Positions 27,935-51,879 of a DNA stretch of 64,000 nt are shown one piece after another. The notes beneath the pieces were generated by a model. That model made no database searches. It had not been told where the DNA came from and was given only the letters and a program-made list of their open reading frames with translations. How positions within the stretch are numbered: position 1 is the stretch's first letter; every line of letters begins with the position of its first letter. The stretch lies in the sequence record NC_061421.1. One strand, written 5' to 3'. A program made the translations under genes and the position numbers.

Positions 27935-28031
27935 GCTCATTTGTCTTCACTGAATGTCTCGTCATTAACCGGCACTGTGAATAACAGTTAATTAAGAGTT
28001 TCCGAGGGTGTCTTATTTCCTCATCACACTA

Positions 28032-28049
28032 GTGATATAGATGTGAAAA
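28032..28049 (-). promoter_or_regulatory. Putative early promoter
   Basis: Minus strand TTTTCACATCTATATCAC. Confidence 0.7.
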
Positions 28050-28059
28050 AAGGTGGGGA

Positions 28060-29856
28060 TTAAGAAAGGTATGCGTAAATCTGGCGATTTTTAGCGTCTA
28101 TACCAGTAAGGTTGACAGTGATCGTGGTACCATCGGTGGAAATACCCACTGTGAAACTGACTCCCGTAGGTGTGCTACTACTATCACCCCAACGATTAGT
28201 AGGATAGGTTTTAAGATTGCCGAGATCGGTGATTAATGTCGGGTTAGTCGTCTCCCACCCCATGAGTAACGGGACTCTTAGGTATTCTAAGTTGCCAGCT
28301 GAGCCATCTCTTGATTCGATATTGAGATTGTAGACATTAGGAATTTGATATTTAGTTAATGCAGTCCGGGTGAATGAAAATGAGGCAGTGCCCCCGGCGT
28401 TTAATGTAATGTTTACGGGGCTACCGATAGAAACGCGACCATTCCTAATTTGAAATACGCCTACTGTACAAGCATTTGAGATACCGTGGTTGCCGAAATA
28501 CGTTTTACTAGCGGCAATAGCGGTTTCTTTAACAAAACCAAGATAACCGCCACTGAAATAAGAACCAGTAACAACAGTTACCATCGACGAACCATTTCCG
28601 GTCGTAATGATATCGTATTCCGGAGTTGCTGTCCCTGTGCCATCGTCATTCACCCCTCTTGTAGTTCTGATTCCGGTGAGTACCAAGACGGAGTCGTCAG
28701 ATTGGAGAATATTACATTGTTCGGTTGTCCCCGCCGTACCTTTACTACCATTACGCTGAATTGAGCAGGTAGAACAAGTGATTGAGGATCCCCCCATCAC
28801 CGCCAAACCTGCTTTTCCGTTCCTATCAATCAGCTCACCGGTGTATGTGTTACCTACCGACTGGTAAAGATAGATACCTTCTCCATCGTTCCACTCGATT
28901 CTCACACCCACAAACGCATTATTATTTGCGCCAGTCAGTAAAGAGATTGCCCGACCGGTATTGGCGTTAAAAGTTGTGTCCATTAATCTGGAGTCAATTA
29001 AATTGTTAGCGCCGAGATTACACCCGTGAATGTTACACCCTCTAGCGTACAAGGTACCTACGTAGTTAGATTTACCTAAGCCTATAGCCCAACGATAAAT
29101 ACCACAACGCTCAAATCGACAACCGTTAAGTTGACCGCTACCCTGCATCAAATTGACCGATTTATCTCTCCCGTCAAAATTGATACCGACGAAATTATGT
29201 CGCCCGGTGAAAGCGAATAAGTAACTCGCCCCCGCGCCCAGTCTTATAACTGTCCCGGTATTATCGAAACTACTGTTTGATGGTGTGGTATAGGGTCGAT
29301 AGCAACTCCCGTAAATACAGAACCCCATAGGTATGGTCACGGTACCTGCATGAACATAAACCCCGACTACCGGCGGATATACTAGATACTTTTCCCCGGC
29401 GTCAATTGCGGCTTTCAATGCATAATCAACGTTGACTTCTACACCAACAGTACTCTTAATGAGCAGTTGATCTTCTTTCGTCATATACGAAAGAATGTTA
29501 GAGGATAAAAGATCAGTGACCTTCGCATTCCCTATCTCACTTATTGAATCCATTTCCTCGTTTAAATCGCGGAGATTGAGGTACTTATTTAATGCATAGA
29601 CACCATTATCAGTTACCACTTGCAAAACGTTCTGCGATGACAGCGTCACTGTGGTTATGGTACCTGTTAAACCCCCAAGATCGAAGAACTGATTGCTTTC
29701 TTCATGAAATAGTACGCTTTCCGTACCTGATGGAATAACTGCACCAACTTCGGCTTTGATAATGTTACTTTCGTCGACCCCGTATAACTGAGCGTTTACT
29801 TGATTCTGTACCTTTAACCCTGTTGATCCGGAAGGTTGTACTAAACGATCTAACAT
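28060..29856 (-). CDS. Tailspike with Kuttervirus TSP1/TSP3-like head domain and beta-helix
   Basis: N-term QPSGSTG..NQ..A..YGV.ES; D.A..AAID cap; repetitive beta-helix with N/C/G ladders. Confidence 0.85.
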   Translation of the reverse strand: MLDRLVQPSGSTGLKVQNQVNAQLYGVDESNIIKAEVGAVIPSGTESVLFHEESNQFFDLGGLTGTITTVTLSSQNVLQVVTDNGVYALNKYLNLRDLNEEMDSISEIGNAKVTDLLSSNILSYMTKEDQLLIKSTVGVEVNVDYALKAAIDAGEKYLVYPPVVGVYVHAGTVTIPMGFCIYGSCYRPYTTPSNSSFDNTGTVIRLGAGASYLFAFTGRHNFVGINFDGRDKSVNLMQGSGQLNGCRFERCGIYRWAIGLGKSNYVGTLYARGCNIHGCNLGANNLIDSRLMDTTFNANTGRAISLLTGANNNAFVGVRIEWNDGEGIYLYQSVGNTYTGELIDRNGKAGLAVMGGSSITCSTCSIQRNGSKGTAGTTEQCNILQSDDSVLVLTGIRTTRGVNDDGTGTATPEYDIITTGNGSSMVTVVTGSYFSGGYLGFVKETAIAASKTYFGNHGISNACTVGVFQIRNGRVSIGSPVNITLNAGGTASFSFTRTALTKYQIPNVYNLNIESRDGSAGNLEYLRVPLLMGWETTNPTLITDLGNLKTYPTNRWGDSSSTPTGVSFTVGISTDGTTITVNLTGIDAKNRQIYAYLS

Positions 29857-29869
29857 GTTATTTCCTCTT

Positions 29870-29891
29870 AAAAGGGGAATAAACCCCTTTT
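29870..29891. terminator. Short terminator hairpin
   Basis: AAAAGGGG-aataaa-CCCCTTTT. Confidence 0.65.
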
Positions 29892-29901
29892 TATTAAAAG
29901 T

Positions 29902-32649
29902 TTAACTATTCCCACCAATCAGAAGATCCATGATGGACGTGAAGCACCACCAGTTCAGTTCTTCTTTATTCAGACCGTAGCGGGTTTCGCCTTCTTCCGA
30001 TTTATCAGCAATGAAGCAGCTATACTCTTTCCAGTCTAAGTCGTACTTTTCCATTATTTCAATGGCAGCTTGGACAGTAGGGCCAGAGTGAAGTTTACCC
30101 TCGTCTCCTTTTGGACACGCTTCTTCTTTCCATCTCCAAACGGAGGGTAGCTGCGCAATCTCAGCAAACGCATGTGTTTCTTTACTCGTGCGAACTCTGA
30201 GATCGTCTTTCAACGTAGCATCAGAAGTAGAGGAAACTCCGTTTGTGGCGTATACTGTAGTAAAACGGAAACTACTCGCACCCATGGCATGGGTATTATC
30301 CGCTTTTGGCTGCATCCCGCTGGAGTTAATAACAAAACCAATACTATTAGAAATGGCATTGAGATAGAGTCGACCTACCGAATCGGCGGTCATACTTGCC
30401 ATCACGGTGGTCTGATCACCAGAGGTGTAGAAATAAACACCTTTAGTGGTAGTATTAGTTGAGTTGATGCCAATGTTGATATCACTGGCTGTTGTTACAC
30501 TACCACCACTACTGATCGTACTTCCAGAAGAGATTTTACCCAGCGCAGAAATATCGCCCGCATTAGAGAACGTAATGTAGTCCGTCGGCGTAGTAGCGCC
30601 GGTGATGTCGTTAATGTACGAGAAAATAAGTACACCATTATCATCTACACGATTAGTCCATTCGCGAGAAAGTAGCGTTGTATTGCTGATAGTGGAGCGA
30701 GTACTGAAAGCTTTGAATGTGAAGTCATTCAGAATACACTGATTAAACTGGAACGAACGAATACGGGCAGTGGCAGTGCTGTAGTCGACGATAATATCGA
30801 CATTACGGTTATAACTACTTAACGCAGCGTACGCCGTATTGAAGTAACAGCGATCGAAACCGATATTCATCGTTCCTTGGGTGATTTGTACCAGTTTACC
30901 GTTCGTATCGCTATATGTACCTTGGGCGTTATTAGTGGCTAAACGGCAGGAAGAGAACAGTACGTTGAACGTATTTTCCAAATATGCTACCGGAACAGGC
31001 GTTACGGTCTCATTACCGTTCTGGCTAAACACAACGCCATAGAAGGCACAGTGCGCAGCATAAATCATGCTAAGACATTTTGCATTTCGGTTATGCGTCT
31101 CGACGTGTCCGCCAAACCAGTTAATCGCATGATGGGGGTAAGACTTACTCAGCCCAATAATTCTCACCATGGTGCAGTTATTGGCAGTTGCTGTTTCTAC
31201 TGCGCAGTTAATGAATGTTAATTGGTTTGAATCGTCTCCGGTTGCGCCATTGTTTCCGGCACCAGAGTAAACAGAAATTTCAATACCCGCAGAAGCCTGC
31301 GTAGTATCTTTCATATCTGTCGTACTTTGAATATTTAAACCGATAAAGATGCTGTCGAAGGTCAATTCGGATACAAGACCTTTCGCAAAACCGTATGTTC
31401 CAACGTTAGTCAATAAACAGCGTTGTGCAGGCAACCAAGTTGTTGCATCACCAAGAACAATTCCGCGGTTATAGTTCGAGTTAGCTCGAAAACCGATGTT
31501 CTCCATAATCACGCGACAACGAGTGACCTTTAACGCATCAATATTGTCGGCGGCAGTTTGAATAATTGAAGCTGACATACCGTCGCCAACAATACGTAAA
31601 CAAGTCTGGAAAGTTGTCCCAGTTCCCGTTCCTTGCATGGTCACAGTCAGGCCAGACTTAATGGGGTAAACACCACCGGGGAAATATAGTGTAATACCAA
31701 CAAAATATGAAGAAGATGTCACTGATTTAACTGGTCGGTATTTTACCGCATCATTAATAGCGGCTTGTATCGCGGGTGCCCAGTCCCAAGTCTCCGGATC
31801 ATCAGGATCGGTTTTATTGGTGATTAACCCTGCGTATTCCCAAATGTTTTTAACCTGGGCGCTAAAGAAATCATTAAGCGTTTGGATCTTGGTACTAAGT
31901 GGTGTCCCTCTTCCGAATGCTAGGGCTTTAGTTATATTTGGATCGATCATTTCCCCTTTTGTGAAACGATCGTTTAGTTCGAGCTGGATGTTTTTGCCCG
32001 TTAAGGTACCGATATTACTCGCGCCGTTCGGTCCGGTGTACGTAGCCAGAAACGCTTCGTTAACTTTCTCTACGTCGTCACTGCCGAAACAGATCGCTAC
32101 TACGGTTTGATTTTCTTTTACTGGAGTAGCGAGTTTAAAACTCAACGTATTGTCGGCAACTAATTCAAATCCAACGTCTTTGAATTGACGCAAACCATCA
32201 ACGTAAACTTCCTGGACTGAGATATTCCCAGTCAGCGGAACAGTAAAAGTTTGCTCTCCGCCGTTACTCAGTCCACCGTTATAAACCCACTGAACAATCG
32301 CTCCTTTATCTTTCAGAGCTTTGTTCAATAGAGCGTAGGTCCCGTAGGTAATTTGTTCGCCGTCGCTATTAAGCAGAGGGGTGACGCCCGACCCGGCATT
32401 CACCCACCCTTGTACGTGTTCTTTCGTAGCGTCGGTATAAACGAAAAAGGTATCGCCACTGACTGTGTTAGCGAGGCCGCTGGCAGTATCACTATAGGCG
32501 TTTTCAAACAGAATACTTTCACGCAATTTTTTGAGCGTGACTTTATAAGTATCATTCTCTTCTTTGACTTGTGCGATGGGAATAAACCCATTCTCAGAGG
32601 CTACCGACAATGCCGGTAATTCGGTAATTTTTAAACTAGACTTATCCAT
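29902..32649 (-). CDS. Tailspike: KISEL anchor, one XD-type module, beta-helix, C-terminal S74-like intramolecular chaperone
   Basis: KITEL..FENAY..FFVY; WVYNGG..GGE; TWDWAPAIQAAI; STSDATLK..LP.VWRW..H.GPTVQ. Confidence 0.88.
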   Translation of the reverse strand: MDKSSLKITELPALSVASENGFIPIAQVKEENDTYKVTLKKLRESILFENAYSDTASGLANTVSGDTFFVYTDATKEHVQGWVNAGSGVTPLLNSDGEQITYGTYALLNKALKDKGAIVQWVYNGGLSNGGEQTFTVPLTGNISVQEVYVDGLRQFKDVGFELVADNTLSFKLATPVKENQTVVAICFGSDDVEKVNEAFLATYTGPNGASNIGTLTGKNIQLELNDRFTKGEMIDPNITKALAFGRGTPLSTKIQTLNDFFSAQVKNIWEYAGLITNKTDPDDPETWDWAPAIQAAINDAVKYRPVKSVTSSSYFVGITLYFPGGVYPIKSGLTVTMQGTGTGTTFQTCLRIVGDGMSASIIQTAADNIDALKVTRCRVIMENIGFRANSNYNRGIVLGDATTWLPAQRCLLTNVGTYGFAKGLVSELTFDSIFIGLNIQSTTDMKDTTQASAGIEISVYSGAGNNGATGDDSNQLTFINCAVETATANNCTMVRIIGLSKSYPHHAINWFGGHVETHNRNAKCLSMIYAAHCAFYGVVFSQNGNETVTPVPVAYLENTFNVLFSSCRLATNNAQGTYSDTNGKLVQITQGTMNIGFDRCYFNTAYAALSSYNRNVDIIVDYSTATARIRSFQFNQCILNDFTFKAFSTRSTISNTTLLSREWTNRVDDNGVLIFSYINDITGATTPTDYITFSNAGDISALGKISSGSTISSGGSVTTASDINIGINSTNTTTKGVYFYTSGDQTTVMASMTADSVGRLYLNAISNSIGFVINSSGMQPKADNTHAMGASSFRFTTVYATNGVSSTSDATLKDDLRVRTSKETHAFAEIAQLPSVWRWKEEACPKGDEGKLHSGPTVQAAIEIMEKYDLDWKEYSCFIADKSEEGETRYGLNKEELNWWCFTSIMDLLIGGNS

Positions 32650-32693
32650 TTCGGTACCTGTATAGTCTGGGTAAATAAGAGGGTATCTAGATC

Positions 32694-32703
32694 GTCATAA
32701 AAA
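32694..32703 (-). promoter_or_regulatory. Putative late promoter (TATG)
   Basis: Minus strand TTTTTATGAC right after hairpin. Confidence 0.6.
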
Positions 32704-32708
32704 CACAA

Positions 32709-32732
32709 GAGCAGGGCCAATTGGCCCTGCTC
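32709..32732 (-). terminator. Perfect 24-bp palindrome terminator
   Basis: GAGCAGGGCCAA-TTGGCCCTGCTC. Confidence 0.75.
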
Positions 32733-32756
32733 GTTATAGACAAATTATAAAACAAT

Positions 32757-32951
32757 TCAACTACCAGAATTGTCCTCGTTAGTCCTGTCTTCTAAAAGAA
32801 AAGAATCATCCAAACCCTTTTCTGATAGGAACCCAAGAGCAGCTTCTTGATAGTTTTCTACTTCTTCGAAGGAAACAATAGCCTCTCCTAGTTCAATCCT
32901 TGAAAGAAAATAGACGTTATCCCGAGCTGTATCTTTGTAAATATAAATCAT
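32757..32951 (-). CDS. Small acidic protein (64 aa) translationally coupled to a tailspike
   Basis: TGATG overlap at 32949-32953. Confidence 0.6.
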   Translation of the reverse strand: MIYIYKDTARDNVYFLSRIELGEAIVSFEEVENYQEAALGFLSEKGLDDSFLLEDRTNEDNSGS

Positions 32952-34936
32952 CACAAATACCCTAAAGTCGGATGTTGATCGGAAAACCAAACTGCGGGCA
33001 GTTTAACTTGAATGGTACCAACAAACCCGGTAAAGTTAAGTCCGGCGTACCCATATTGAGATGTCCCAGTATCGCAAGACAACATGTAAGTACCCATGTA
33101 ATTATCCGCGGTGAGGGTAATACCTGTTTTTGTCAGTGAGTTTAAAATATCCTGCTGTGGACCTAGGGCATAGCCACTATAGTTTTCACTCATTGACACC
33201 ACGTTAGTCGTGGCATTATTAGTAAAAGACTGAGATGAGACTAAACGACATACGCCACGTACGTAAACATTGCCGGTAGTTGCGGAGCCAGCTTTGACCG
33301 AACAGGATACATGAAATTTCTGTTGGCTATTACTGTTATTAATCGGCGTACCCCAGAGAAGGTTAACTGAGTTAGTTGTACTTGTGGCAGTGATTGTCAC
33401 CGGGATCAAACCGTCAGAGTCTGCATCTGCTGCAGAACCGTAGACAATAGTTGAGCCGTTAGCAACTACGTACCACTGCCCAATTGCTCTGGCGGTAGGT
33501 AAGGCCGCACCCGCGGTACCGTTAAATAATAACCCAGCGCTATTCAAAATGTAACCGTCAGTAGTATCGTAGGACGGCAAAAAGCGATAGGTTTGTCCAC
33601 GTAACGGGTAACGTATTCTGATTTTGATCAGGTTAGTGGGATCGTACGCCTTATAACTCCCATAAGCACTATTAACGTGTGGGCCATAGCAGAAAATATT
33701 TACGTTGTCAAGGTCGATAGCGGTGCGTGTAGTGGTCGCATAACCGATCGTTCTGACGCCACGATAAGGGTCGTTAACAAACGCGTACATGTAGATGTTT
33801 CCGCCGATCATTTTAAAGTTATTTTCGCCCGCGCCGGTTGTGCGAGATGGGCAGTTGGCTAAATAACGGAAACCCTCGACGTGACATTCAACCAACGTAT
33901 CTTGACCGATGTTCACTGGCGAATAAAAGACAACATCGTTTGTATTGTAGTCGAAGCTACAACCAAAATATTTAAACATGTGAACAGTGTCGTTTCGGTA
34001 AACTCCGCCCAAATAGTTATCGCCGATGAGACAGTTAACAAAACGCATGTTCTCGCCGGAGTTAATGCAGTTTGTGCCGGCGTCAGTTACTACGCCGTAC
34101 GCATTTCGATAAAAGTCACAATTCTCCACAACATCCAAATACGTATCGGTAGAACCGATTCTAATTCCGCCGTAAAATTGTGCAACTTTCACACCTGTAA
34201 TTTTTACTTCCCTTACATGGACATAACCACCAGACGGGTAAGTGGTGTTCCCAAGAGAAATACCGTGGAAGGTCGTTTTGTCGTATCCAGGACCTAAAAT
34301 AAAAAGTGCATTAGTGTCCAACACTTCGGTGTAGCTGGCAGAACTCCCTGCATTATTAGTAAATGGATTGGCTGCAGATCGGGTAAGTCCTGTAAACTCG
34401 CCAGTTATCTCTACGCCGTTCCCGGTAGTAAAGGCGCTAAAATCCCATGTCTGGTTAGTGTCGACAACGATAGAAACAAACGGTGGGACCCGTACTGTCG
34501 CTGTCATTTTATAAACTGTTTCGCCGGTGGCGTTATCTAATGGCGGTACACGCAGACGATAAGTCCCGTTTGCGATATAACCTCTAGCGATAACAATTTT
34601 AACAATGTCAGTAGTTATCTTATTAATACACTGAGAGAGATTATTTAAAGAAGCAGAAAACCCGGCCATCCATACGTTAATAGGTTTTGTTGTATCGAGG
34701 AGCCAGTTAGCTCCTTTGGCCGTTTTAAATACGCTGTAGTCGTTATCTGCGACTGTAGAACTTGCTCTGTATGTCATTATTTCATTTACGTCAGGCCCGT
34801 CAACGACCGCTCGTTTTAATAGAACGCGCTGACCGTCAAACCAAGGTTCTAAAGACCGTAACTCAGTTACGGACCCTACGGTCAAAAGAGAATATTCGCC
34901 GTTACTCCCTCGTGGCTTATTGAAATCAGTAAGCAT
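32951..34936 (-). CDS. Tailspike/depolymerase with short FNKPRGS head
   Basis: SV.ELR.LEPW..GQ.V.L tailspike N-domain; NSGEN.RF..C, CSFDY beta-helix motifs shared with 35011. Confidence 0.85.
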   Translation of the reverse strand: MLTDFNKPRGSNGEYSLLTVGSVTELRSLEPWFDGQRVLLKRAVVDGPDVNEIMTYRASSTVADNDYSVFKTAKGANWLLDTTKPINVWMAGFSASLNNLSQCINKITTDIVKIVIARGYIANGTYRLRVPPLDNATGETVYKMTATVRVPPFVSIVVDTNQTWDFSAFTTGNGVEITGEFTGLTRSAANPFTNNAGSSASYTEVLDTNALFILGPGYDKTTFHGISLGNTTYPSGGYVHVREVKITGVKVAQFYGGIRIGSTDTYLDVVENCDFYRNAYGVVTDAGTNCINSGENMRFVNCLIGDNYLGGVYRNDTVHMFKYFGCSFDYNTNDVVFYSPVNIGQDTLVECHVEGFRYLANCPSRTTGAGENNFKMIGGNIYMYAFVNDPYRGVRTIGYATTTRTAIDLDNVNIFCYGPHVNSAYGSYKAYDPTNLIKIRIRYPLRGQTYRFLPSYDTTDGYILNSAGLLFNGTAGAALPTARAIGQWYVVANGSTIVYGSAADADSDGLIPVTITATSTTNSVNLLWGTPINNSNSQQKFHVSCSVKAGSATTGNVYVRGVCRLVSSQSFTNNATTNVVSMSENYSGYALGPQQDILNSLTKTGITLTADNYMGTYMLSCDTGTSQYGYAGLNFTGFVGTIQVKLPAVWFSDQHPTLGYL

Positions 34937-34963
34937 TGTAACACCTCAAAATTGAAAGACGAA

Positions 34964-34975
34964 GTCATAGAAAAA
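34964..34975 (-). promoter_or_regulatory. Putative late promoter (TATG)
   Basis: Minus strand TTTTTCTATGAC, 30 nt upstream of ATG. Confidence 0.6.
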
Positions 34976-35004
34976 TCGGAGGAGACACTTGGTCTCCTCC
35001 GATT
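34974..35004 (-). terminator. Intrinsic terminator hairpin
   Basis: AATCGGAGGAGAC-acttg-GTCTCCTCCGATT. Confidence 0.8.
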
Positions 35005-35010
35005 AATTTA

Positions 35011-37278
35011 CTACTCGTTAATAAACCAATGTACGGGGGCTTTAACGTAAATAGTTCCTACTAACCCAGTGAAGTTAATAGAAACTCCTATTTGATCCGA
35101 ATATGCAGCCTTTCTTACCGACATTGGGAATGCAATATACCCTACGTCAGTTAAACCGGTTAATGTTTTCTTCTTATTAAAGTGAGAATCTACCCCAACA
35201 GACGTACCTTGTGTGTTGGCTAACTGTGAACGAGTCTCTGTGATTGTGGCCACGCTACCAGAAACAGTACCTGTATAAGTTGGCGTATCGTAGTACTTAA
35301 TGTAGTTATACAAGTAAAGTCCTGATACGTAGTCACTCCCTAATCTTACCGAAATTGCGGAGGCAAAAAGAGGGTTAAAGTTGTTTGCTGAATCAAATCT
35401 TTTTAAGCATTCAAGAGTAATAACATTACTTGCTAGAGTAGAAGTGATTTTAATCGTTGCGAGCCCATCTTCATCCAGCGTAGCGAGTTTGGTAATGGTT
35501 ACACCGGTTCCAGTAAAACTAAACTTATGTTGAGTTCGACTATCGGTTTGGTTGTTGAAATCAGTATCTGTTGCCACTGTATCCCATTTCCAGCGCCACC
35601 CCATCAAAGATTGTTGATAATCACTCAAAACAGGAGTAGTGGCGCGAAGGGAACCGGATGGTGCTAATGTATTGTATCCGCCCTTAACAACGCAAACAAA
35701 CTGGTCCCCGGTATTATCTCCGTAACCAGCAACGGTTCCCTGGCCTGTGAGGGAGTAATAAGGAGCCCAATAGTAATCCGATAAAGACCATGCGCACTCA
35801 TTGAAGGTTACCCCGAGGTCTTTCGTTGGGCAGGAAATCATTTGGCGTGCGTGGTTCGCTCTAAAAGTGTCAGAGTAATAAGGAGAGGTGTACTGGTTAG
35901 GGTAGAGGTAGACGCCATTGAACATGAAAATGTTTCGAATGTTCCATGTGTTACCTGGATAGATCTGAGTGAGCTGAGGTTGATTTACCAACATATTACC
36001 AAAGCCTTCGATCCATCCTCTTTCCATCGTGACACGGGTATTAGAGGAATAAAGTGAGCATCTAAAAACATCCCCTGCCGTGTAGTCCAAACTCGTGTCA
36101 ATGATACTAACTATCGCGCCCTTATCAAACCAGAAATGAGCGGTATCGTTATTCCCAATAACCCCGTTAATGAATACTATCTTTTCACCGGAGTTAACAA
36201 TAGTTTGGTTAGTTTCGAACCACACCCCGATTTGGTTATTTGCAATATTGAAATCAGAAAAAGTATTGCAATAAAAGTTAATGTAGTTGATACGCAGACC
36301 GTACTTAAATCCTTCCACCCTGAAATTCTTGACATTAAGATCCCTGACAGACATCGGGAGCGTTCCATAGGTGGCAATTCTAATACCCGCGGCGTTACTT
36401 GTTGACTTTCCTGGGCCTAAAATAAAGAAAGACCCGCCATTAGCGTTAAAGAAATTCGACCCCTGAGTATCGACGAAATTACTATCCGGCATCTGGCCAG
36501 CTGCAACACCGGTGATACCTTCATTCGTGATAACGATCGCGTCATCATTTGTTAGAGAAGTGACTAAATAAATATTCCCATAAGAGACTAAAGAAAAGAA
36601 CGAGGGGATTTTAACTTGTTTCTCTAGCACGTATTTATCGGAAAACTGAGGAAAGAAAATCTGAGTGCTAACACCGAAAGTATTCTTGTTAGCGGAAATT
36701 TTGGCGGTAGTAAAATCAACAATTTTTTGGATTGCGGCTCCTGTACCCGTACCGTCGCTTTTCACTCCGGCCAAACGAATATCTACCCCTTTAGAGACAT
36801 CAACTTTCCAACGGGCACCTTTGGGAGTCACCATAATTGAGAAGTCATTATCAGCGGAAGCAACGTCGCTAGAATCATAATTGGCAATAATATTGATTAG
36901 CGGACCGCCTTGTACAGCACGCTCTAAAATAATTTTTTGCCCTGCGTACCACGGCTCAAATTTTCGCAGATCGGCGATAGTCGCGACAGATACTGTTGTC
37001 AGTGTAGATGGAAACGCCAGAACAGTAAAAGAACCTGCGTTCGTAGTTACCGTGGCTGTGGTTCCGGTAACAGAAACGCCACTCACAACTCCGGTGATAG
37101 CGGTAGTATTAAAAATCTCTTTTGATTCTGGAAGAATAGCAAAAGAGTAATTTGTCAGGTCGTTACCGACTTCCAGTGAACTGATAGACGTTTGCGGGAT
37201 GTTCAATAACTGAGAAAGAACCTCGCCGCTTGATTGTACGGATGTACTTCCACCCGGCTGAATAAAATTAGTTTGCAT
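35011..37278 (-). CDS. Tailspike with TSP1/TSP3-like head domain and beta-helix
   Basis: Start at MQTNFIQPGGSTS; DLRKFEPWYAGQKI; NSGEKIVF, TSLDY. Confidence 0.85.
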   Translation of the reverse strand: MQTNFIQPGGSTSVQSSGEVLSQLLNIPQTSISSLEVGNDLTNYSFAILPESKEIFNTTAITGVVSGVSVTGTTATVTTNAGSFTVLAFPSTLTTVSVATIADLRKFEPWYAGQKIILERAVQGGPLINIIANYDSSDVASADNDFSIMVTPKGARWKVDVSKGVDIRLAGVKSDGTGTGAAIQKIVDFTTAKISANKNTFGVSTQIFFPQFSDKYVLEKQVKIPSFFSLVSYGNIYLVTSLTNDDAIVITNEGITGVAAGQMPDSNFVDTQGSNFFNANGGSFFILGPGKSTSNAAGIRIATYGTLPMSVRDLNVKNFRVEGFKYGLRINYINFYCNTFSDFNIANNQIGVWFETNQTIVNSGEKIVFINGVIGNNDTAHFWFDKGAIVSIIDTSLDYTAGDVFRCSLYSSNTRVTMERGWIEGFGNMLVNQPQLTQIYPGNTWNIRNIFMFNGVYLYPNQYTSPYYSDTFRANHARQMISCPTKDLGVTFNECAWSLSDYYWAPYYSLTGQGTVAGYGDNTGDQFVCVVKGGYNTLAPSGSLRATTPVLSDYQQSLMGWRWKWDTVATDTDFNNQTDSRTQHKFSFTGTGVTITKLATLDEDGLATIKITSTLASNVITLECLKRFDSANNFNPLFASAISVRLGSDYVSGLYLYNYIKYYDTPTYTGTVSGSVATITETRSQLANTQGTSVGVDSHFNKKKTLTGLTDVGYIAFPMSVRKAAYSDQIGVSINFTGLVGTIYVKAPVHWFINE

Positions 37279-37301
37279 TTTAGGTCCTATCAAAACGTGA
37301 A

Positions 37302-37331
37302 AAGCGAAGGAGGAGAAACTCTCCTTCGCTT
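37302..37331 (-). terminator. Terminator hairpin
   Basis: AAGCGAAGGAG-gagaaact-CTCCTTCGCTT. Confidence 0.75.
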
Positions 37332-37345
37332 ATTTTCTTACATTA

Positions 37346-37639
37346 TCAGGATTGACCGTTAATACCAAAACTAGCAGATAGTTCTTTCTCTGCTTGTTCT
37401 AATATTTCTTCCCCTGATTGGCTTTCAGTAACGATTTTGAAAGTTACTGCCCCTTGAGAAAACCCTTCTATATCCACCGTAAAGAAAATCTCGGCGATAT
37501 CTCCTATATATTTTCCCCCGTAATTAATACTTGTAGCCGTATACGTGGCTTCTAGGGATTTTAAAGAAGGTGTAGATGAAGATCCAATTTCATCAATTTT
37601 CTCTTTCGTATAAAATTCTTTGACTACAGTAAAGCTCAT
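37346..37639 (-). CDS. Small tailspike-associated protein (97 aa)
   Basis: Follows spike stop by 11 nt, GAGG RBS; MSFTV.KE..TYTA..F.V..G...F..EQAE..L pattern. Confidence 0.7.
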   Translation of the reverse strand: MSFTVVKEFYTKEKIDEIGSSSTPSLKSLEATYTATSINYGGKYIGDIAEIFFTVDIEGFSQGAVTFKIVTESQSGEEILEQAEKELSASFGINGQS

Positions 37640-37650
37640 CTTCAGTCCTC

Positions 37651-40302
37651 TTATATTTGGGTTATTTCTATCTCGATACCGTAGATATTACCTGCCACTG
37701 GGGTATCGGTGTTTTGAGAAGTACCTCGGTAAAGTGCAGGTGGGATAATAATATCAAAACATTGACCGTTATTAGCTGAGAAATATCCTGCCTGCAGACC
37801 GCTGAATGTTTGCGCGAATATTGTGTTTGTAGTAAAGCTTGACAGCGCCGATAACGTGGTAGTGTAAACGCTATTATTGACCGTAGTTTCAGCTTTGAGC
37901 TTCTCTAGTTCCACTACGGAAGCAACGTAACTTTGTCCCTGAGTACTGACAATATAAGAACGACTGTTAACGTGGTTAGCGCCATTAACTCTTAATTCGA
38001 CTTTAAACGTACTATTGACGGGCAAATTCGAAAATCTTATAATGCCATTGGAGGTTTCGGACGTTGACCCTGACGTTAACTTAGTGCGATAGCATATTCT
38101 AGCGCCCTTCAACTGAATAGGCGCTCTGGCACCGTAGGGAGAGACGCCATAGGTAGATCTTCCATACGTGTAAGTCGAACCGTCACTAGTAGGGTATGCT
38201 AAATTATCCCAAACGTTGTAACTATTAGTTCCGCCTGCAGATGGAACAATAACAGAACCATCGGTATAACCATATTGGTTGTCGTCATTTTCCCAACGAA
38301 CGTCGACTAATGCGTTTGTACTCTCGGTTACGAAAGTCCTTACTAAATCGCCGAAATTACCTTGTTTCACTCCGTCAAATCGAGTATGGACCGTACTCTC
38401 TACAAAACCAGAATATGCTCTGACATAAAAGATTATTTGCGGATCATTAGTATATGTCGTCCCTACCCATCCACCAACGTCAAATGTCGAGGAATACATA
38501 AACGCACGATCGGCACTATTACCACCGCCCAAGACAACTGCGCGACTTGACTTACCGACGGCAGAGCCAAAGTTAAAATAGTATCTCTTAACTGTTGTAC
38601 CGTAGAAACTTTGCCAGGCTGATTTTGAATAAAAGAGAATACCCTGCAAACAATGACGTATGTTTAAGTTATCTGCATAGAAGTTTTCTGTCCAAGAAAT
38701 CTCGTTGCAGACAACGACAGCGGCAGATAAAATGTAACCATGTGCGTGGAAATTAACTAGTTCGTTACCCCAGCCATCGGCGAATCTCGCAAAATGTAAG
38801 GGGTTAACTTTGTCCTCACAAAATGCGTAGATCCCCGAAATCTTACCGGGGTTCCAGCAAGGGGCACCTGCGTTCGTGTTAAAGAATTTTATCCCGTACG
38901 TTTCCCCGCTTGTGGCATATTTGTGATTTATTTTTACCGTGTCCATCCCTGTTCCATCACCACCTCGAATATGTAACGGGTAGTTAGTAACATCGATAGA
39001 AACGCTGCCGTAAAAGGTATACATTGTATTATTTGGCGGGATAATAATAAGAGGTATACCACCATCTCTTGAACATTTAACCGCGTTCTTTAACGGAGTT
39101 GTAATGTCACTACCTTCAGTAACTCCGTACTCTGAAAGATTAATTTCCCTTTTCTCCCTGATTCTCTCCCAGTAATACCCATTCCCAGCCGCGACTGTGC
39201 CTCCGTCATCGGTCCCTGTCCCTATATGCCCAATGAATTGACCCCCGCCCGAAGTACTCCCAGTGTAATACCCCTTCAGGTTTACTTTCTCGCCTTCAAA
39301 ATTAGGTCTTCTGTTTCTGAGATCATCGAAGGAGTTTACGCCGTAGAACCCCTGAACTACTTGCTCCAGGCTTACGCCGTAAGAAGTATTCACTTTGGTA
39401 GCGCCAGTTGTTTGGCCTAGCGTTAAGAGAACCTCAGCCGGCGTCCCTGATACCTGTGCGGTAATAATCGAGCGAGAACCACCGAGTAAGACTTCAACAA
39501 CGTCGTTCGCTTTCAGCGCTTTCGAAAGATTAATTTTCAGCCCGGTGCTGTCTACTTCGTAGTGTTTATTCAGAACTTGTTTTGAGCCGTTGATGTAAAT
39601 GGCAGGAACCGTACTGAACGTCCACGACGGGGTAAGCGATGTTTCCCCGCCCACTGCTGCGCCGTCGTTATATAACCACGTTACGTTGACGTAGTCAGTA
39701 ATCCCGGGTTCCACAGGCGTCACAGGAGTACCTGGGTATGGTCTGACGTAGAAGACAACGAAAGCACCGGCGGTTAATGCGCCTTTTAATTTTACTTTGT
39801 TCGATAACCGATCGAACGTATAGTTCAACCCTTTGAACTGATGTCCGCCATTCAAGAACATCTCTGAGACATCAAAACAGTCGAACGGTAACGCGATCTC
39901 TGTCTCGCCGCCGTTAGCAGAACCGTTGTTATACAGGTAGCTAACGTATGACGTATAGGAGCCGAATTTACCATCAGCCATCATTTTCCCGGTGCCGTAG
40001 ATAACCGGTGTATTGTCTTTATAAAGGGCTGTGGCAGAAGCACCGTTGACGTTAGTAAACGCAGCGACGTAGAATTGGCTCTCGTCGGTATAGACGTAGA
40101 AGATTTCATCTTTGACGGTGGCCGCAATACCTTCTGCGAGGGTTTCGTAAGCGTTTTCAAAGAGAAGGTTAGCGCGAAGATTATTTAGGGTGGTGCGGTA
40201 TGTTTCCTTTTCAGCGCCCGCTACTGCCACTGGCAATAGAGCAGATTCTGGAACAATACCCTTACTCGAAAGTTCGGAAATTTTTCTTGTGTTATTGGCC
40301 AT
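37651..40302 (-). CDS. Hub tailspike: KISEL anchor, two XD-type modules, tailspike N-domain and beta-helix
   Basis: Start moved to MANNTRKISEL (GAGG RBS); YLYNNGSANGGETEI and WLYNDGAAVGGETSL; SFDDLR..P..GEKV.L.GYY.G..GGGQF. Confidence 0.88.
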   Translation of the reverse strand: MANNTRKISELSSKGIVPESALLPVAVAGAEKETYRTTLNNLRANLLFENAYETLAEGIAATVKDEIFYVYTDESQFYVAAFTNVNGASATALYKDNTPVIYGTGKMMADGKFGSYTSYVSYLYNNGSANGGETEIALPFDCFDVSEMFLNGGHQFKGLNYTFDRLSNKVKLKGALTAGAFVVFYVRPYPGTPVTPVEPGITDYVNVTWLYNDGAAVGGETSLTPSWTFSTVPAIYINGSKQVLNKHYEVDSTGLKINLSKALKANDVVEVLLGGSRSIITAQVSGTPAEVLLTLGQTTGATKVNTSYGVSLEQVVQGFYGVNSFDDLRNRRPNFEGEKVNLKGYYTGSTSGGGQFIGHIGTGTDDGGTVAAGNGYYWERIREKREINLSEYGVTEGSDITTPLKNAVKCSRDGGIPLIIIPPNNTMYTFYGSVSIDVTNYPLHIRGGDGTGMDTVKINHKYATSGETYGIKFFNTNAGAPCWNPGKISGIYAFCEDKVNPLHFARFADGWGNELVNFHAHGYILSAAVVVCNEISWTENFYADNLNIRHCLQGILFYSKSAWQSFYGTTVKRYYFNFGSAVGKSSRAVVLGGGNSADRAFMYSSTFDVGGWVGTTYTNDPQIIFYVRAYSGFVESTVHTRFDGVKQGNFGDLVRTFVTESTNALVDVRWENDDNQYGYTDGSVIVPSAGGTNSYNVWDNLAYPTSDGSTYTYGRSTYGVSPYGARAPIQLKGARICYRTKLTSGSTSETSNGIIRFSNLPVNSTFKVELRVNGANHVNSRSYIVSTQGQSYVASVVELEKLKAETTVNNSVYTTTLSALSSFTTNTIFAQTFSGLQAGYFSANNGQCFDIIIPPALYRGTSQNTDTPVAGNIYGIEIEITQI

Positions 40303-40342
40303 TGCAAGAAACCTCATTGTCGGCAATAGGGCTGTAAAAATA

Positions 40343-40354
40343 GTCATAGGAAAA
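40343..40354 (-). promoter_or_regulatory. Putative late promoter (TATG)
   Basis: Minus strand TTTTCCTATGAC; its ATG was mis-picked as the ORF start 40347. Confidence 0.6.
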
Positions 40355-40357
40355 CAA

Positions 40358-40387
40358 ATAGAGAGGGGCCGAAAAGCCCCTCTCTAT
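40358..40387 (-). terminator. Intrinsic terminator hairpin
   Basis: ATAGAGAGGGGC-cgaaaa-GCCCCTCTCTAT. Confidence 0.8.
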
Positions 40388-40469
40388 GATTATTGTTACA
40401 CACGTTATCACAAAGTTGAATTGTAATCAAAGCTTACAATTACCACAAATGTTTTCGCTTCCCTGTAAA

Positions 40470-42698
40470 TTAAATTAAGCTTTTCGCAATAACAGTAGGC
40501 GGCACATTAGCAATAGCTGCTGCAGTTACTGTCGCGGATGCGACGATATCGAGAATACCCGCGCCTGTTGTCGCATCAAACCTGACTACACGGTAAGTTC
40601 CGGTCGCGCCTGCGATGGAAATAAAAGCACCTTCGTAGAGTCCGTTTGGGTTTTGGAAAGTTACTGACCGACTACCACTGGTGGTGGTTACTGTACCGGA
40701 TATTGTATCTAACGTTCCCGAAAGTACAACTCTGTATTCGTTCCAGCGAGTCGCACTAGGCACCGTCGTTCGCACGATACTTCCCTGAATGTGGGTACCG
40801 CTGATAAGACCGGGGGCGCCAGTTAAGTCAGTTACCGTCTTATCTGGTCCGCGATAACCACCGTTATTGGTGCCAAAATAAATACCGCCATCCCCTACGT
40901 TGTTAGCGAAGAAGCTGTCAGGGTGAATAATATTCACGTTCACAAAACGCCCGTCGGTAGAAGTCCCAGTACGGTATTGATAAGGAGCAACGTTGTTAAC
41001 CATGTAGACAATTAAATCTGACATGTTAGCGCGAATCCAGAAGAAAGACCCTGCCGTAAAGCCAGAAAGTACGGATTTATTCCAATTACTTCCTCTATTG
41101 TTTGTCCAGCGCCAACGACCGGCTTTACTTGGAGTATAAGTGATTGTACTAGGGGTGTTATTCACCATTACAGCCCCGGACGAACCTTCGTCAAAATCAT
41201 TATTATCAAGAACAAAGATATTATCTACTTGTTGGAGATTGATCCAGTAACGCGCGTTGGTCGAACCTAATCGTTGATTTTTAAAGGTATTAGAACGAAC
41301 ATAAAGATTACTAATCCTTTGCCCTTCTCCACTAGTTACTTGGTTAATACCGCCGTAACAATTATCTGAAATATTATTTTCAAAATAAATATTATCATAG
41401 GTACAAGTACCTGTGTTCCAAGAACGAATGCGTAATGGACAGGTTTCAATATTACCTTCATTAGTGGAATAAATATTGAAAAACTGATTACCCTGAATAA
41501 CTATGTTTTTGATGTAAGCGCCGTTAGGGGAATTGTCGTCATTTGTCAAATAAACACCTGACTGTATCGAAGTATCGACCAAGTTATTTTTAATAATCAC
41601 ATTTTGCACGTACGTATACAACTTAAACGCGGCCTGTGTGTTTGAAACTTTGTTATCGCTGATCAGAGCATTGTTTACTGGATAATTAGGGTCGAAACTT
41701 CCGCATGAGATTGCGTCATCCCCCACTCGTTCCACTTTATTATTCTGTGCAGTGATGTCGGTTGTGCGATAAAAATGAATTCCATCAGTACCGGCCTTCA
41801 CCGTGTTACCGCCAATATGATCGTGAACGTAACAGTTACGTACAGTGACATTTTTAGAATAATCGAATTGAATACCGTAACCGATAGCATTGGCTTCGTC
41901 AACAAACTCAATCACACCATCGCCAGAGTTAGAAATATACAACGACTTAGGGCCAATTGTCCCAGTGTAACTATTGTAGTTAGGGCGGGTTATTTTAAAA
42001 TGACCAAAGTAGTGTCGGTACTTTGTTACGCTGACTGATTCCGAACCAATCCTAATTCCTTGTCCTAGATGGTTAATTCTGAACTCGGTCAGACTCATAC
42101 CGGCCCCTCTGAAAATGACTCCCTGAGTAGGGACTATGACTGGGGCGTCAAGACGATAGATACCTGGTTTTTGCTGGTAAATGACCTTACCGGAATTGAA
42201 AGCAGCAGTAACAGCGGAGCTACTATCAGTATTCCCGCTAGGGTCCGCACCATATTGTTCCAACGTCGCATATCCCAAAACATCCTCAAGATACCCTTTA
42301 TCTTGCAAAGGAATAATTTTAGTCCCGCCGACCTCACTAACGAGCGCAGCCGATGTTATCTTCCTACTTGTCGGTAATCTTACCTGATTATTGTCATATC
42401 CTAATACTGGGTTAGCAACGCCCGACACATTCTGATATTGCAACACCCACAGTTTTGCAACTGTTTCATAGACGAAGAAGACATCGCCCGACACAGTAGC
42501 ATCTAGTCCAGCGTCTACAGATAAGAAAGCGTTATCAAAGCCCAGAGTTTGGCGAAGATCGTTGATCTTAGTTGCTTTGGTAAATGCGACGCCTGCATCG
42601 GTCTTTGCGTTAATAGGGACGACGTCATTTTCTTTAATGACGCCTGCATCACCTAGTTCAGAAATTTTGATTCCAATGGAATCTGGCAATTTAGGCAT
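40470..42698 (-). CDS. Tailspike: KISEL anchor plus pectate-lyase/GH28-like beta-helix
   Basis: KISEL..FDNAF..FFVY; YGADPSG..DS..A..AA; GTDGIHF, GDDAIS motifs. Confidence 0.88.
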   Translation of the reverse strand: MPKLPDSIGIKISELGDAGVIKENDVVPINAKTDAGVAFTKATKINDLRQTLGFDNAFLSVDAGLDATVSGDVFFVYETVAKLWVLQYQNVSGVANPVLGYDNNQVRLPTSRKITSAALVSEVGGTKIIPLQDKGYLEDVLGYATLEQYGADPSGNTDSSSAVTAAFNSGKVIYQQKPGIYRLDAPVIVPTQGVIFRGAGMSLTEFRINHLGQGIRIGSESVSVTKYRHYFGHFKITRPNYNSYTGTIGPKSLYISNSGDGVIEFVDEANAIGYGIQFDYSKNVTVRNCYVHDHIGGNTVKAGTDGIHFYRTTDITAQNNKVERVGDDAISCGSFDPNYPVNNALISDNKVSNTQAAFKLYTYVQNVIIKNNLVDTSIQSGVYLTNDDNSPNGAYIKNIVIQGNQFFNIYSTNEGNIETCPLRIRSWNTGTCTYDNIYFENNISDNCYGGINQVTSGEGQRISNLYVRSNTFKNQRLGSTNARYWINLQQVDNIFVLDNNDFDEGSSGAVMVNNTPSTITYTPSKAGRWRWTNNRGSNWNKSVLSGFTAGSFFWIRANMSDLIVYMVNNVAPYQYRTGTSTDGRFVNVNIIHPDSFFANNVGDGGIYFGTNNGGYRGPDKTVTDLTGAPGLISGTHIQGSIVRTTVPSATRWNEYRVVLSGTLDTISGTVTTTSGSRSVTFQNPNGLYEGAFISIAGATGTYRVVRFDATTGAGILDIVASATVTAAAIANVPPTVIAKSLI

Positions 42699-42729
42699 TT
42701 TTCCACCCTCAGGGTTAAAAGAAAGTTAA

Positions 42730-42744
42730 TCATACGAAACAAAA
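42730..42744 (-). promoter_or_regulatory. Putative late promoter (TATG)
   Basis: Minus strand TTTTGTTTCGTATGA, identical to 45154-45168 on plus. Confidence 0.65.
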
Positions 42745-51868: not shown

Positions 51869-51879
51869 TTGAGGTTTAA

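What the first reader, a model, noticed from the sequence alone, without database searches (positions are those of the whole stretch)
28060..40302. Hub-and-passenger code: each XD-bearing spike is followed by exactly as many unanchored spikes as it has XD modules
Seen, in transcription order: 37651..40302 (KISEL anchor, two modules at ~39945-39742 and ~39684-39478 joined by a PGTPVTPVEPG linker) is followed by 35011 (QPGGSTS head) and 32951 (KPRGSNG head); 29902 (KISEL anchor, one module at ~32295-32080) is followed by 28060 (QPSGSTG head). The W/Y-x-YNxG-x-AxGGET modules match, from memory, the XD3 docking domain of Kuttervirus CBA120 TSP4/TSP2, and the QPxGST heads match TSP1/TSP3 heads that dock on XD domains (established mechanism). 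Inference: two Ackermannviridae-style branched sub-trees (1+2 and 1+1) grafted onto a jumbo-phage anchor, with stoichiometry written in gene order. 35011 and 28060 lack their own TATG motif, consistent with co-expression with their hub. Hyperbranched fibres are known in phiKp24, but this count rule and anchor combination look new to me.
Basis: partly seen in the sequence, partly recalled or inferred. Interest (0 to 1): 0.9.

Follow-up and report, generated by a model that had tools for sequence, protein, structure and literature searches.

The report
Branched tailspike docking modules of phiKp24
The window is the published Klebsiella jumbo phage phiKp24, and the finding is part of its known branched tailspike apparatus: two spikes carry docking modules and three neighbouring spikes carry the matching heads, but the proposed "count rule" is a capacity match in one lineage, not a general code.

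Summary

**Confirmed**
- gp306 (37651-40302) has two XD modules and gp301 (29902-32649) has one. They are homologous to solved CBA120 TSP4 XD3 and Shigella phage B2 gp49.
- gp304 and gp300 start with TD1-type heads, matching CBA120 TSP3/TSP1, the 859-residue tail fibre protein 4qnl and B2 gp48.
- gp303 keeps only the 17-residue N-terminal peptide.
- Genome-wide, phiKp24 has exactly 3 XD modules and 3 such N-termini.

**Already published**
- The T4gp10-like regions of gp306 and gp301 are listed in Ouyang 2022, Supplementary Data 2.
- One short T4gp10-like fragment as one attachment site is modelled in Latka 2019.

**The count rule is not general**
- It fails in relative MJ359 (1 XD, two headed followers).
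- It fails for gp313-type spikes.
- It fails in G7C-like phages and B2 (2 XD, 1 passenger) and in RaK2 (5 XD, 4 heads).
- Ackermannviridae and K64-1 do not follow the gene order.

**New detail**
- The "KISEL" domain is a separate, multi-copy jumbo-phage anchor: 9 copies in phiKp24, and 8 in Serratia phage Moabite, which has no XD or TD1.
- This favours many parallel roots plus two small sub-trees over the published single-root model.

The parts
37651..40302 (-). gp306 (GenBank numbering; RefSeq gp107), 883 aa: hub spike with KISEL domain, two XD modules and a depolymerase body
39964..40302 (-). gp306 KISEL N-terminal domain (residues 1-113)
   Evidence: No PDB, Pfam or NCBIfam relative. AF2 pLDDT 66 with no Foldseek hit.
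39721..39960 (-). gp306 XD module a (residues ~115-194)
39466..39699 (-). gp306 XD module b (residues ~202-279). It aligns to CBA120 TSP4 residues 257-333.
37346..37639 (-). gp305, 97 aa, small ORF between the hub and its first passenger. PHROG 7836, function unknown. Absent in some relatives.
35011..37278 (-). gp304, 755 aa: passenger spike with a TD1-type head (class MQTNFIQPxG). It has no TATGA element of its own.
36964..37278 (-). gp304 TD1-type head (residues 1-105)
32951..34936 (-). gp303, 661 aa: passenger spike and paralogue of gp304. It keeps only the 17-residue N-terminal peptide (34886-34936) and has its own hairpin + TATGAC element.
32757..32951 (-). gp302, 64 aa, small ORF abutting gp303. 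An ORF of the same size follows the gp303-type spike in the three annotated relatives checked.
29902..32649 (-). gp301 (RefSeq gp112), 915 aa: hub spike with KISEL-type domain (LKITEL), one XD module, a depolymerase body and a C-terminal Peptidase_S74 chaperone
32074..32310 (-). gp301 XD module (residues ~114-192)
28060..29856 (-). gp300, 598 aa: passenger spike with a TD1-type head (class MLxRLVQPxG, residues 1-105 = 29542-29856). It lies 45 nt after gp301, with a hairpin but no TATGA element.
40343..40387 (-). Hairpin + T-run + TATGAC element upstream of gp306. Like elements lie at 42729-42771 (gp307), 34964-35004 (gp303) and 32694-32732 (gp301).
   Evidence: annotated as terminators in the record
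37302..37331 (-). Hairpin without a TATGA motif between gp305 and gp304, annotated as a terminator in the record
40470..42698 (-). gp307, 742 aa: KISEL-anchored spike without XD. Shown as context: one of seven KISEL spikes in the window.
49874..53541 (+). gp312 (KISEL anchor, 0 XD) followed after 11 nt by gp313 (no anchor, no head). This is a within-genome exception to the literal count rule.

Best explanation
The region is part of the receptor-binding apparatus of Klebsiella jumbo phage phiKp24.

**Anchoring.** Nine phiKp24 proteins begin with a lineage-specific ~113-residue 'KISEL' domain. It most likely fixes each trimer to the virion independently of any XD module (inferred).

**Branching.** Two of these spikes, gp306 and gp301, carry two and one T4-gp10/XD3-type branching modules between the anchor and the depolymerase body (shown).

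**Passengers.** Three anchor-less depolymerases carry the cognate N-terminal docking element (shown):
- gp304 and gp300 have a full TD1-type head.
- gp303 has only its first 17 residues.

**Docking.** By analogy with the solved or tested pairs B2 gp49/gp48, G7C gp66/gp63.1, CBA120 XD3-TD1 and KP32 branching domain-peptide, each XD trimer docks one passenger trimer. This gives sub-complexes gp306+gp304+gp303 and gp301+gp300 (inferred from adjacency, conserved N-terminal classes and shared transcription units).

**What the count means.** The equality of XD modules and passengers reflects docking capacity (one site, one partner) inherited within this lineage. It is not a general rule written in gene order.
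For: - **Identity:** (100% over 14.8 kb).
- **XD homology:**
- **TD1 homology:**
- **Peptide-only gp303:**
- **Genome-wide census of phiKp24 by piecewise six-frame HMM scans:** 3 XD modules, 2 TD1 heads plus 1 peptide, and 9 KISEL domains.
- **Conserved order in 8 relatives:** K+2XD > head class ii > peptide class iii > K+1XD > head class i, while the catalytic bodies vary.
- **KISEL works without XD:** Moabite has 8 KISEL spikes and no XD or TD1. KISEL is not XD-like by hhalign, probability 0.2%.
- **Transcription signals:** gp304 and gp300 lack the hairpin + TATGA element that precedes gp301, 303, 306, 307, 309, 310 and 312.
- **Literature for the docking principle:** PMC11414711, PMC13352976, PMC11654681, PMC6872550.
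- **Independent lineage:** K64-1 has a hub with 5 XD-like modules flanked by 5 QPKGS/TD1 spikes.
Against: - No binding was tested. No multimer prediction was available.
- Which XD takes which head is inferred only from gene order.
- MJ359 has 4 docking-type N-termini for 3 XD modules in the fetched 46 kb.
- RaK2, G7C-like phages and B2 have more XD modules than headed passengers.
- In Ackermannviridae one XD type (XD2) joins two hubs rather than docking a passenger. gp306 module a occupies the XD2 position.
- What the KISEL domain binds is unknown, and its fold is unresolved.
- An annotated terminator hairpin lies between gp305 and gp304.
- The eight relatives share ancestry, so they count as one observation.
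Confidence: 0.62

Rival explanations
1. Published single-root model (Ouyang 2022). gp306 alone contacts the baseplate. gp301 and the other spikes hang from its T4gp10-like domains in successive peripheral layers.
For: - gp306 has the longest N-terminal structural part and two XD modules.
- Ackermannviridae give a precedent for one anchored root, TSP4.
Against: - Only 3 XD modules exist in the whole genome, for about 15 spike-like proteins.
- gp301 and seven other proteins carry the same KISEL domain as gp306 and lack a TD1 or peptide head.
- Moabite mounts 8 KISEL spikes with no XD at all.
Confidence: 0.1
2. Ackermannviridae-style hub-hub joint. gp306 module a (XD2 position) binds gp301's XD. 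The region then forms one tree, and only module b docks a head.
For: - XD2-XD2 joins TSP2 and TSP4 in CBA120-like phages.
- Foldseek aligns both gp306 modules along TSP4 residues 1-335.
- Published HHpred pairs gp301's module with XD2 positions too.
Against: - It would leave three docking-type N-termini for one free site.
- gp301 has its own KISEL anchor, unlike TSP2. Published HHpred aligns CBA120 gp163 from residue ~10 to the XD modules, so TSP2 has little room for a separate anchor.
- All three phiKp24 modules score like the XD3-position modules of a Taipeivirus, and only weakly like the XD2 positions.
Confidence: 0.12
3. No fixed stoichiometry. Heads of one class compete for the same XD site, so virions are mosaics. 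XD number sets only an upper or approximate capacity.
For: - MJ359 has two class-i TD1 heads (36% identical heads, unrelated bodies) behind a single-XD hub.
- RaK2, G7C-like phages and B2 have spare XD modules.
Against: - Eight of nine phiKp24-group genomes show exact 3:3 numbers in the loci examined.
- K64-1 shows 5:5.
- The rest of the MJ359 genome was not scanned.
Confidence: 0.25
4. Every XD-bearing spike is followed in transcription order by exactly as many unanchored spikes as it has XD modules, as a general rule.
For: It holds for the two hubs of phiKp24, LPKP23 and Centimanus, and for the 2-XD hub in all nine genomes.
Against: - It fails for the 1-XD hub in 6 of 9 genomes: MJ359, plus five with a gp313-type follower.
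- It fails for gp312/gp313 in phiKp24 itself.
- It fails in G7C-like phages and B2, where 2 XD are followed by 1 passenger.
- In K64-1 and RaK2, two passengers precede the hub.
- In Taipeivirus the order is hub, hub, head, head.
Confidence: 0.05

Closest known systems
phiKp24 hyperbranched tail fibres as published (Ouyang et al. 2022, PMC9700779)
   Same: It is the same genome. The paper's Supplementary Data 2 reports T4gp10-like regions in gp306 (residues 64-275) and gp301 (61-194), with HHpred matches to CBA120 gp163 and gp165.
   Different: - The paper proposes a single root (gp306) and says both hubs offer sites for more than one fibre.
- It did not report TD1 heads on gp300 and gp304, the peptide-only gp303, the nine-copy KISEL domain, or gp312 as a spike.
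CBA120 / Ackermannviridae TSP1-4 complex (XD2, XD3 and TD1 domains)
   Same: XD3-type modules sit N-terminal to the depolymerase body. TD1-type heads on anchor-less spikes dock on XD3.
   Different: - Only TSP4 is anchored there, and TSP2 joins through XD2-XD2. Here both hubs, and seven more proteins, carry their own unrelated KISEL anchor.
- gp306 has two XD3-like modules.
- One passenger has lost the TD1 body.
Shigella phage B2 gp49/gp48 (PDB 9d83, 9d84) and the G7C gp66/gp63.1 type (Schitoviridae)
   Same: These are the best sequence matches for the tandem XD pair (E 1.5e-26). gp48 and the 859-residue chain 4qnl (G7C tailspike per PMC11654681) match the head profile. B2 gp49/gp48 is a solved, co-purified hub-passenger complex.
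   Different: - Two XD modules serve a single passenger there.
- The N-terminal anchor is different.
- These are podophages.
KP32-type Przondovirus RBP1 branching domain + RBP2 conserved peptide (PDB 7xy1; PMC13352976)
   Same: A single XD-like module follows the anchor. The passenger attaches through a short N-terminal peptide alone, as proposed here for gp303.
   Different: - The anchor there is T7-like.
- Peptide similarity to gp303 was not tested.
Alcyoneusvirus K64-1 / RaK2 multi-depolymerase cluster (Latka 2019, PMC6872550)
   Same: These are jumbo Klebsiella phages with a hub bearing several XD-like modules, flanked by QPKGS/TD1-headed depolymerases. gp300 is 42% identical over its full length to K64-1 S2-2.
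   Different: - One hub carries 5 modules.
- There is no KISEL domain.
- Passengers lie on both sides of the hub.
- RaK2 has one head fewer than it has modules.

Membership tests
T4 gp10-like / XD3 branching domain | Sequence homology to a solved XD domain | tested here: met
   - gp306 N-terminus: 9d83_D E 1.5e-26; 7rej/7rfo (CBA120 TSP4 1-335) E 1.4e-11 over residues 257-333.
- gp301 N-terminus: 9d83_D E 6.2e-12; 7rfo E 1.2e-4.
T4 gp10-like / XD3 branching domain | Same fold | tested here: met
   - The AF2 model of gp306 residues 1-300 has pLDDT 70-87 in the XD regions.
- Foldseek: 7rfo_A E 2e-8; 9d84_B TMt 0.94, rmsd 0.9 over 68 columns.
- Overall model confidence is low (mean pLDDT 55).
T4 gp10-like / XD3 branching domain | Placed between an N-terminal virion anchor and the enzymatic beta-helix | tested here: met
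T4 gp10-like / XD3 branching domain | Binds the N-terminus of a second trimeric spike | not testable with these tools
   No multimer prediction or binding assay was available.
TD1 / Tail_spike_N head (CBA120 TSP1 and TSP3, the 4qnl tail fibre, B2 gp48) | Homology of the first ~90 residues to solved TD1 heads | tested here: met
   Profile A2 of 12 heads hits 6nw9/5w6f residues 1-87 at E 3.2e-10, 4oj5 at 4.1e-8, 4qnl at 8.3e-8 and 9d84_A at 1.8e-7.
TD1 / Tail_spike_N head | Recognised by the curated Pfam model with single sequences | tested here: not met
   - No PF18668 hit for gp300, gp304 or any of the 12 heads.
- Single-sequence PDB searches were also empty at the N-termini.
- The relationship is seen only at profile level.
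Conserved N-terminal docking peptide (KP32 RBP2 type) | [quoted passage not shown] | tested here: met
   - gp303 residue 18 aligns to gp304 residue 96.
- The peptide MLTDFNKPRGS.. is conserved in all relatives.
Ackermannviridae four-TSP complex | A single anchored root; the second hub lacks an anchor and joins through XD2-XD2 | tested here: not met
   Both hubs, plus seven other proteins, have the KISEL domain. The modules score as XD3-position type.
   - The 2-XD hub holds in 9 of 9 genomes. The 1-XD hub holds in 3 of 9.
- Counting only QPxGS-type N-termini, it holds in 8 of 9, with MJ359 the exception.
   - G7C-like hubs: 2 XD, 1 headed follower. B2: 2 XD modules in Gp49, a single partner gp48.
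- RaK2: 5 XD, 4 heads. K64-1: 5 and 5, but on both sides of the hub.
- Taipeivirus: gene order hub, hub, head, head.
KISEL jumbo-phage anchor domain (PHROG 27731; precomputed Pfam tag PF27114) | N-terminal, multi-copy, restricted to one group of jumbo phages, independent of XD | tested here: met
   - Copy number and distribution.
- hhalign against the XD profile gives probability 0.2%.
- Its binding partner and fold are unknown.

The most novel reading that the evidence does not exclude
The phiKp24-group receptor-binding apparatus is not one hyperbranched tree hanging from gp306. It is a comb of about nine spikes, each rooted by its own KISEL domain. A borrowed XD3/TD1 (and peptide) docking system adds two small sub-trees (1+2 and 1+1). 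XD3 module number sets the docking capacity, and hub-passenger pairs are kept adjacent and partly co-transcribed.
Probability: 0.45. Interest if true: 0.45.

Novelty: already known. Interest (0 to 1): 0.28.

Why it matters
**What is already known.** Branching of tailspikes through T4gp10-like modules is how multi-depolymerase Klebsiella phages recognise many capsule types. This is established, and it has been proposed for this very phage.

**What the check adds.** It gives a sharper parts list for phiKp24:
- exactly three XD3-type sites
- three cognate N-termini
- a separate nine-copy anchor domain

**Consequence.** These numbers do not fit the published single-root model. If confirmed structurally, the topology of the most complex known Klebsiella phage fibre system would need to be redrawn. 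XD and head counts would then serve as a rough, not exact, annotation aid for predicting which spikes ride on which.

Tried and rejected
- **Single-sequence PDB searches** with gp300, gp304 and gp303 found nothing at their N-termini. Only the 12-sequence profile worked.
- **Pfam and NCBIfam** gave no family for the KISEL domain, the XD modules or the heads.
- **The KISEL profile against PDB** gave one chance-level hit.
- **The AF2 model of the KISEL domain** was mediocre (pLDDT 66), and Foldseek gave no hit below E 0.5. Its fold stays unresolved.
- **The idea that the C-terminal half of KISEL is an XD2-like module** was suggested by published HHpred ranges starting at residue 61-64. It was tested by hhalign and rejected (probability 0.2%).
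- **The search for homologous proteins on the gp300 head** returned one near-identical protein, so no head structure was predicted.
- **A full-text search for PDB codes 9D80-9D84** returned only noise. The entries were identified through Foldseek descriptions and protein sizes instead.
- **A simple TNTATGAC pattern count** was uninformative.
- **gp313-type spikes as XD passengers** were considered. This was set aside because they always travel with a RaK2-gp526-like partner, whatever that partner's attachment type.

Full report
**Identity of the window.** Window 28000-42800 is 100% identical to Klebsiella phage vB_KpM_FBKp24 (phiKp24; MW394391.1 / NC_061421.1, record 214000-228800). Window coordinate = record coordinate minus 186000.

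In GenBank numbering the minus-strand genes are as follows:

| Gene | Window coordinates |
|---|---|
| gp307 | 40470-42698 |
| gp306 | 37651-40302 |
| gp305 | 37346-37639 |
| gp304 | 35011-37278 |
| gp303 | 32951-34936 |
| gp302 | 32757-32951 |
| gp301 | 29902-32649 |
| gp300 | 28060-29856 |

**Observation.**
- gp306 has two ~78-residue modules at residues ~115-194 and ~202-279, joined by the Pro/Thr/Val linker.
- gp301 has one module at residues ~114-192.
- The three modules are 26-30% identical to each other.
- gp304, gp303 and gp300 begin with the quoted QPGGSTS, KPRGSNG and QPSGSTG stretches.

- gp301 reads LKITEL, not KISEL.
- The ~113-residue 'KISEL' domain is shared by seven spikes in the window (gp301, 306, 307, 308, 309, 310, 312; 25-44% pairwise identity).
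- It also occurs in gp168 and the 207-residue gp153 elsewhere in the genome.

**Are the modules XD-like? Yes.**
- The gp306 N-terminus hits solved structures:
  - 9d83_D 'Gp49' at E 1.5e-26 and 9d80_D at 2.6e-26, with both modules aligned;
  - 7rej/7rfo at 1.4e-11 over chain residues 257-333;
  - 7xy1 at 8.8e-10 and 6w4q at 5e-8.
- gp301 hits the same set more weakly.
- Foldseek descriptions identify 7rfo/7rej as CBA120 TSP4 residues 1-335, and 9d84 as Shigella phage B2 Gp48+Gp49.
- An AF2 model of gp306 residues 1-300 is poor overall (pLDDT 55) but reaches 70-87 in the XD regions.
- That model matches 7rfo_A at E 2e-8 and a 69-residue Gp49 chain at TMt 0.94.
- An HMM of the phiKp24-group modules scores the XD3-position modules of a Taipeivirus strongly and the XD2-position ones only weakly. 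All three modules are therefore XD3-like in sequence.

**Are the heads TD1-like? Yes, at profile level.**
- Single sequences found nothing.
- A profile of 12 heads from phiKp24 and relatives (A2) hits:

| PDB chain | Description | E-value |
|---|---|---|
| 6nw9 / 5w6f | tailspike protein 3, residues 1-87 | 3.2e-10 |
| 4oj5 | tailspike protein | 4.1e-8 |
| 4qnl | tail fibre protein | 8.3e-8 |
| 9d84_A | Gp48 | 1.8e-7 |
| 5w6h | tailspike protein 4 | 0.014 |

- gp303 is a paralogue of gp304 that lacks the TD1 body. Its residue 18 aligns with gp304 residue 96. It keeps only a 17-residue N-terminal peptide, as in the branching-domain/conserved-peptide pairs validated for KP32-type phages (PMC13352976).

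**Census.**
- Piecewise six-frame HMM scans of the whole phiKp24 record find exactly 3 XD modules, 2 TD1 heads plus the gp303 peptide, and 9 KISEL domains.
- Docking sites and docking-type N-termini are therefore 3:3 genome-wide.
- Three sites cannot carry the other ~12 spikes, as the published single-root model would need.

**What the KISEL domain is.**
- It has no Pfam, NCBIfam or PDB relative. It matches PHROG 27731, function unknown.
- Its AF2 model (pLDDT 66) has no Foldseek match.
- It is not XD-like by hhalign (probability 0.2%).
- By tblastn it occurs only in 23 jumbo-phage records: the phiKp24 group, Serratia Moabite-like phages and a Pectobacterium phage. tblastn finds 4-7 places per record.
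- Moabite has eight consecutive KISEL spikes and no XD or TD1 at all. KISEL therefore attaches independently of XD.
- The XD/TD1 system looks like an add-on in the phiKp24 group.

**The count rule in relatives.**
- Eight related genomes were examined: LPKP23, MJ359, KpLz-2_45, KpZh_1, KpYy_2_45, KpXa_1, KpLz_1_41 and Centimanus.
- All keep the order K+2XD > TD1 head (MQTNFIQP class) > peptide (MLTDFNKPRGS class) > K+1XD > TD1 head (MLxRLVQP class), with varying catalytic bodies.
- This is shared ancestry, so effectively one observation.
- Exceptions:
  - MJ359 has two class-i TD1 spikes behind the 1-XD hub. Their heads are 36% identical and their bodies unrelated. Only 3 XD modules lie in the 46 kb locus.
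  - Five genomes add a gp313-type spike after the class-i passenger.
  - In phiKp24, gp313 follows gp312, which has no XD.
- gp313-type spikes seem to ride with a RaK2-gp526-like partner, whatever that partner's attachment type. gp312 residues 119-600 resemble the TD1-headed 607-residue spike of KpLz-2_45 (E 2e-26). These cases therefore argue against the literal rule but not against XD-to-head matching.

**Independent lineages.**
- G7C-like hubs (a metagenomic N4-like contig and phage U1G) have 2 XD modules and one headed follower.
- B2 gp49 (2 XD) co-purifies with the single gp48 (PMC11654681).
- Taipeivirus 0507-KN2-1 is ordered hub, hub, head, head, gp313-like.
- In Ackermannviridae, XD2 joins the two hubs and XD3 takes TD1 (PMC11414711).
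- The K64-1 and RaK2 hubs each have 5 XD-like modules. The weaker modules were seen only after one HMM iteration.
- K64-1 has 5 QPKGS/TD1 spikes, two before and three after the hub. RaK2 has 4 plus a gp313-type spike.
- Module number therefore tracks capacity, often exactly. It is neither a strict equality nor a gene-order code.

**Transcription signals.**
- Strong hairpin + T-run + TATGA elements occur at exactly seven places in the 64 kb window. All lie upstream of spike genes: gp301, 303, 306, 307, 309, 310 and 312.
- gp304 and gp300 have a hairpin but no TATGA. gp305 and gp313 follow the preceding gene after 11 nt, and gp302 abuts gp303.
- This fits co-expression of gp306 with gp304, gp301 with gp300, and gp312 with gp313. 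gp303 has its own element.
- The record annotates the gp305/gp304 hairpin as a terminator.
- Reading TATG as a phiKZ-type late promoter is from my memory and was not tested.

**Prior art.**
- Ouyang 2022 states that gp306 and gp301 contain T4gp10-like folds used for docking.
- Its Supplementary Data 2 lists the regions (gp306 64-275, gp301 61-194) with HHpred matches to CBA120 gp163 and gp165. It lists nothing for gp300, 303 or 304.
- Latka 2019 modelled anchor / T4gp10-like / conserved-peptide systems in Klebsiella phages. It suggested that a short T4gp10-like fragment corresponds to a single attachment site.
- DepoCatalog reports activity for 11 of the 14 phiKp24 receptor-binding proteins.
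- I found no paper in the held library describing the TD1 heads, the 3:3 census or the KISEL family in phiKp24.

**Verdict.**
- The sequence observation is real, and the XD/TD1 assignment is right.
- The mechanism is the established hub-passenger docking, already proposed for this phage.
- The count rule is a lineage-specific capacity match and fails as a rule.
- The useful residue is a revised topology hypothesis: many KISEL roots plus two small XD sub-trees.

No rule of the brief was knowingly breached.

Noticed in passing
window 49874-53541 (+); L004 12317-15877; L023 19614-23046; L019 22527-25991: The gp313-type spike (N-terminus MNYYYID-like; no anchor, XD or head) always lies within 13 nt of, or overlaps, a RaK2-gp526-like spike. 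That partner carries either a KISEL anchor (phiKp24 gp312) or a TD1 head (relatives, RaK2, Taipeivirus). It looks like a mobile two-gene spike pair.
   Followed up: partly
L022 14955-18536 (K64-1); L023 14042-17383 (RaK2): The Alcyoneusvirus hubs carry about five XD-like modules. RaK2's 'MSLxNL' spikes carry four more XD-like modules (2+1+1), giving 9 modules for 10 clustered spikes. In K64-1 seven modules were detected; the homologue of RaK2's two-module spike (ORF531) looks disrupted in the RefSeq annotation and was not scanned. The RaK2 number equals the edges of a single-rooted tree, which may be coincidence.
   Followed up: partly
window 40343-40348 and 40347; L003, L006, L009, L010 gp303-like ORFs: The ATG inside the TATGAC promoter-like motif creates spurious N-terminal ORF extensions. 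Examples are gp306 from 40347 and the relatives' gp303-like ORFs starting 'MTSSYSH..'.
   Followed up: yes
window 49874-51868 (+): gp312 has a KISEL anchor and a spike body homologous to a relative's passenger spike. It is not among the 14 depolymerases listed in the phiKp24 paper.
   Followed up: partly
MW394391.1 record 124602-125225 (L012) and 133771-136416: gp153 is a 207-residue protein that is little more than a KISEL domain. gp168 is a further KISEL-anchored spike far from the cluster.
   Followed up: no
window 37346-37639 (-) and 32757-32951 (-): Two small ORFs sit inside the spike operons: gp305 (97 aa, PHROG 7836) and gp302 (64 aa). gp305 is present in KpLz-2_45 but absent in LPKP23. 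They may be assembly factors.
   Followed up: no
window 22276-26400 (-): The gp294 and gp295 spikes have a third kind of N-terminus. gp295 residues 1-150 match PHROGs annotated 'virion structural protein'. The pair is conserved in all relatives and in Moabite.
   Followed up: no
L003 13675-16086 (-): MJ359's 803-residue extra passenger has a second TD1-like repeat at residues ~109-176 of the protein (domain E 2.5e-7). This resembles the tandem TD1-TD2 arrangement of Ackermannviridae spikes.
   Followed up: no
window 29902-30300 (-), gp301 residues 765-868: gp301 ends with an endosialidase-type stalk fragment and a Peptidase_S74 intramolecular chaperone domain (E 4e-8).
   Followed up: no
L007 / L008 (OZ240615.1 ends): The Centimanus record is linearised inside the spike cluster. 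A 'tail fiber protein' at 137-913 looks like the cut remainder of the gp307/gp308-type gene.
   Followed up: no
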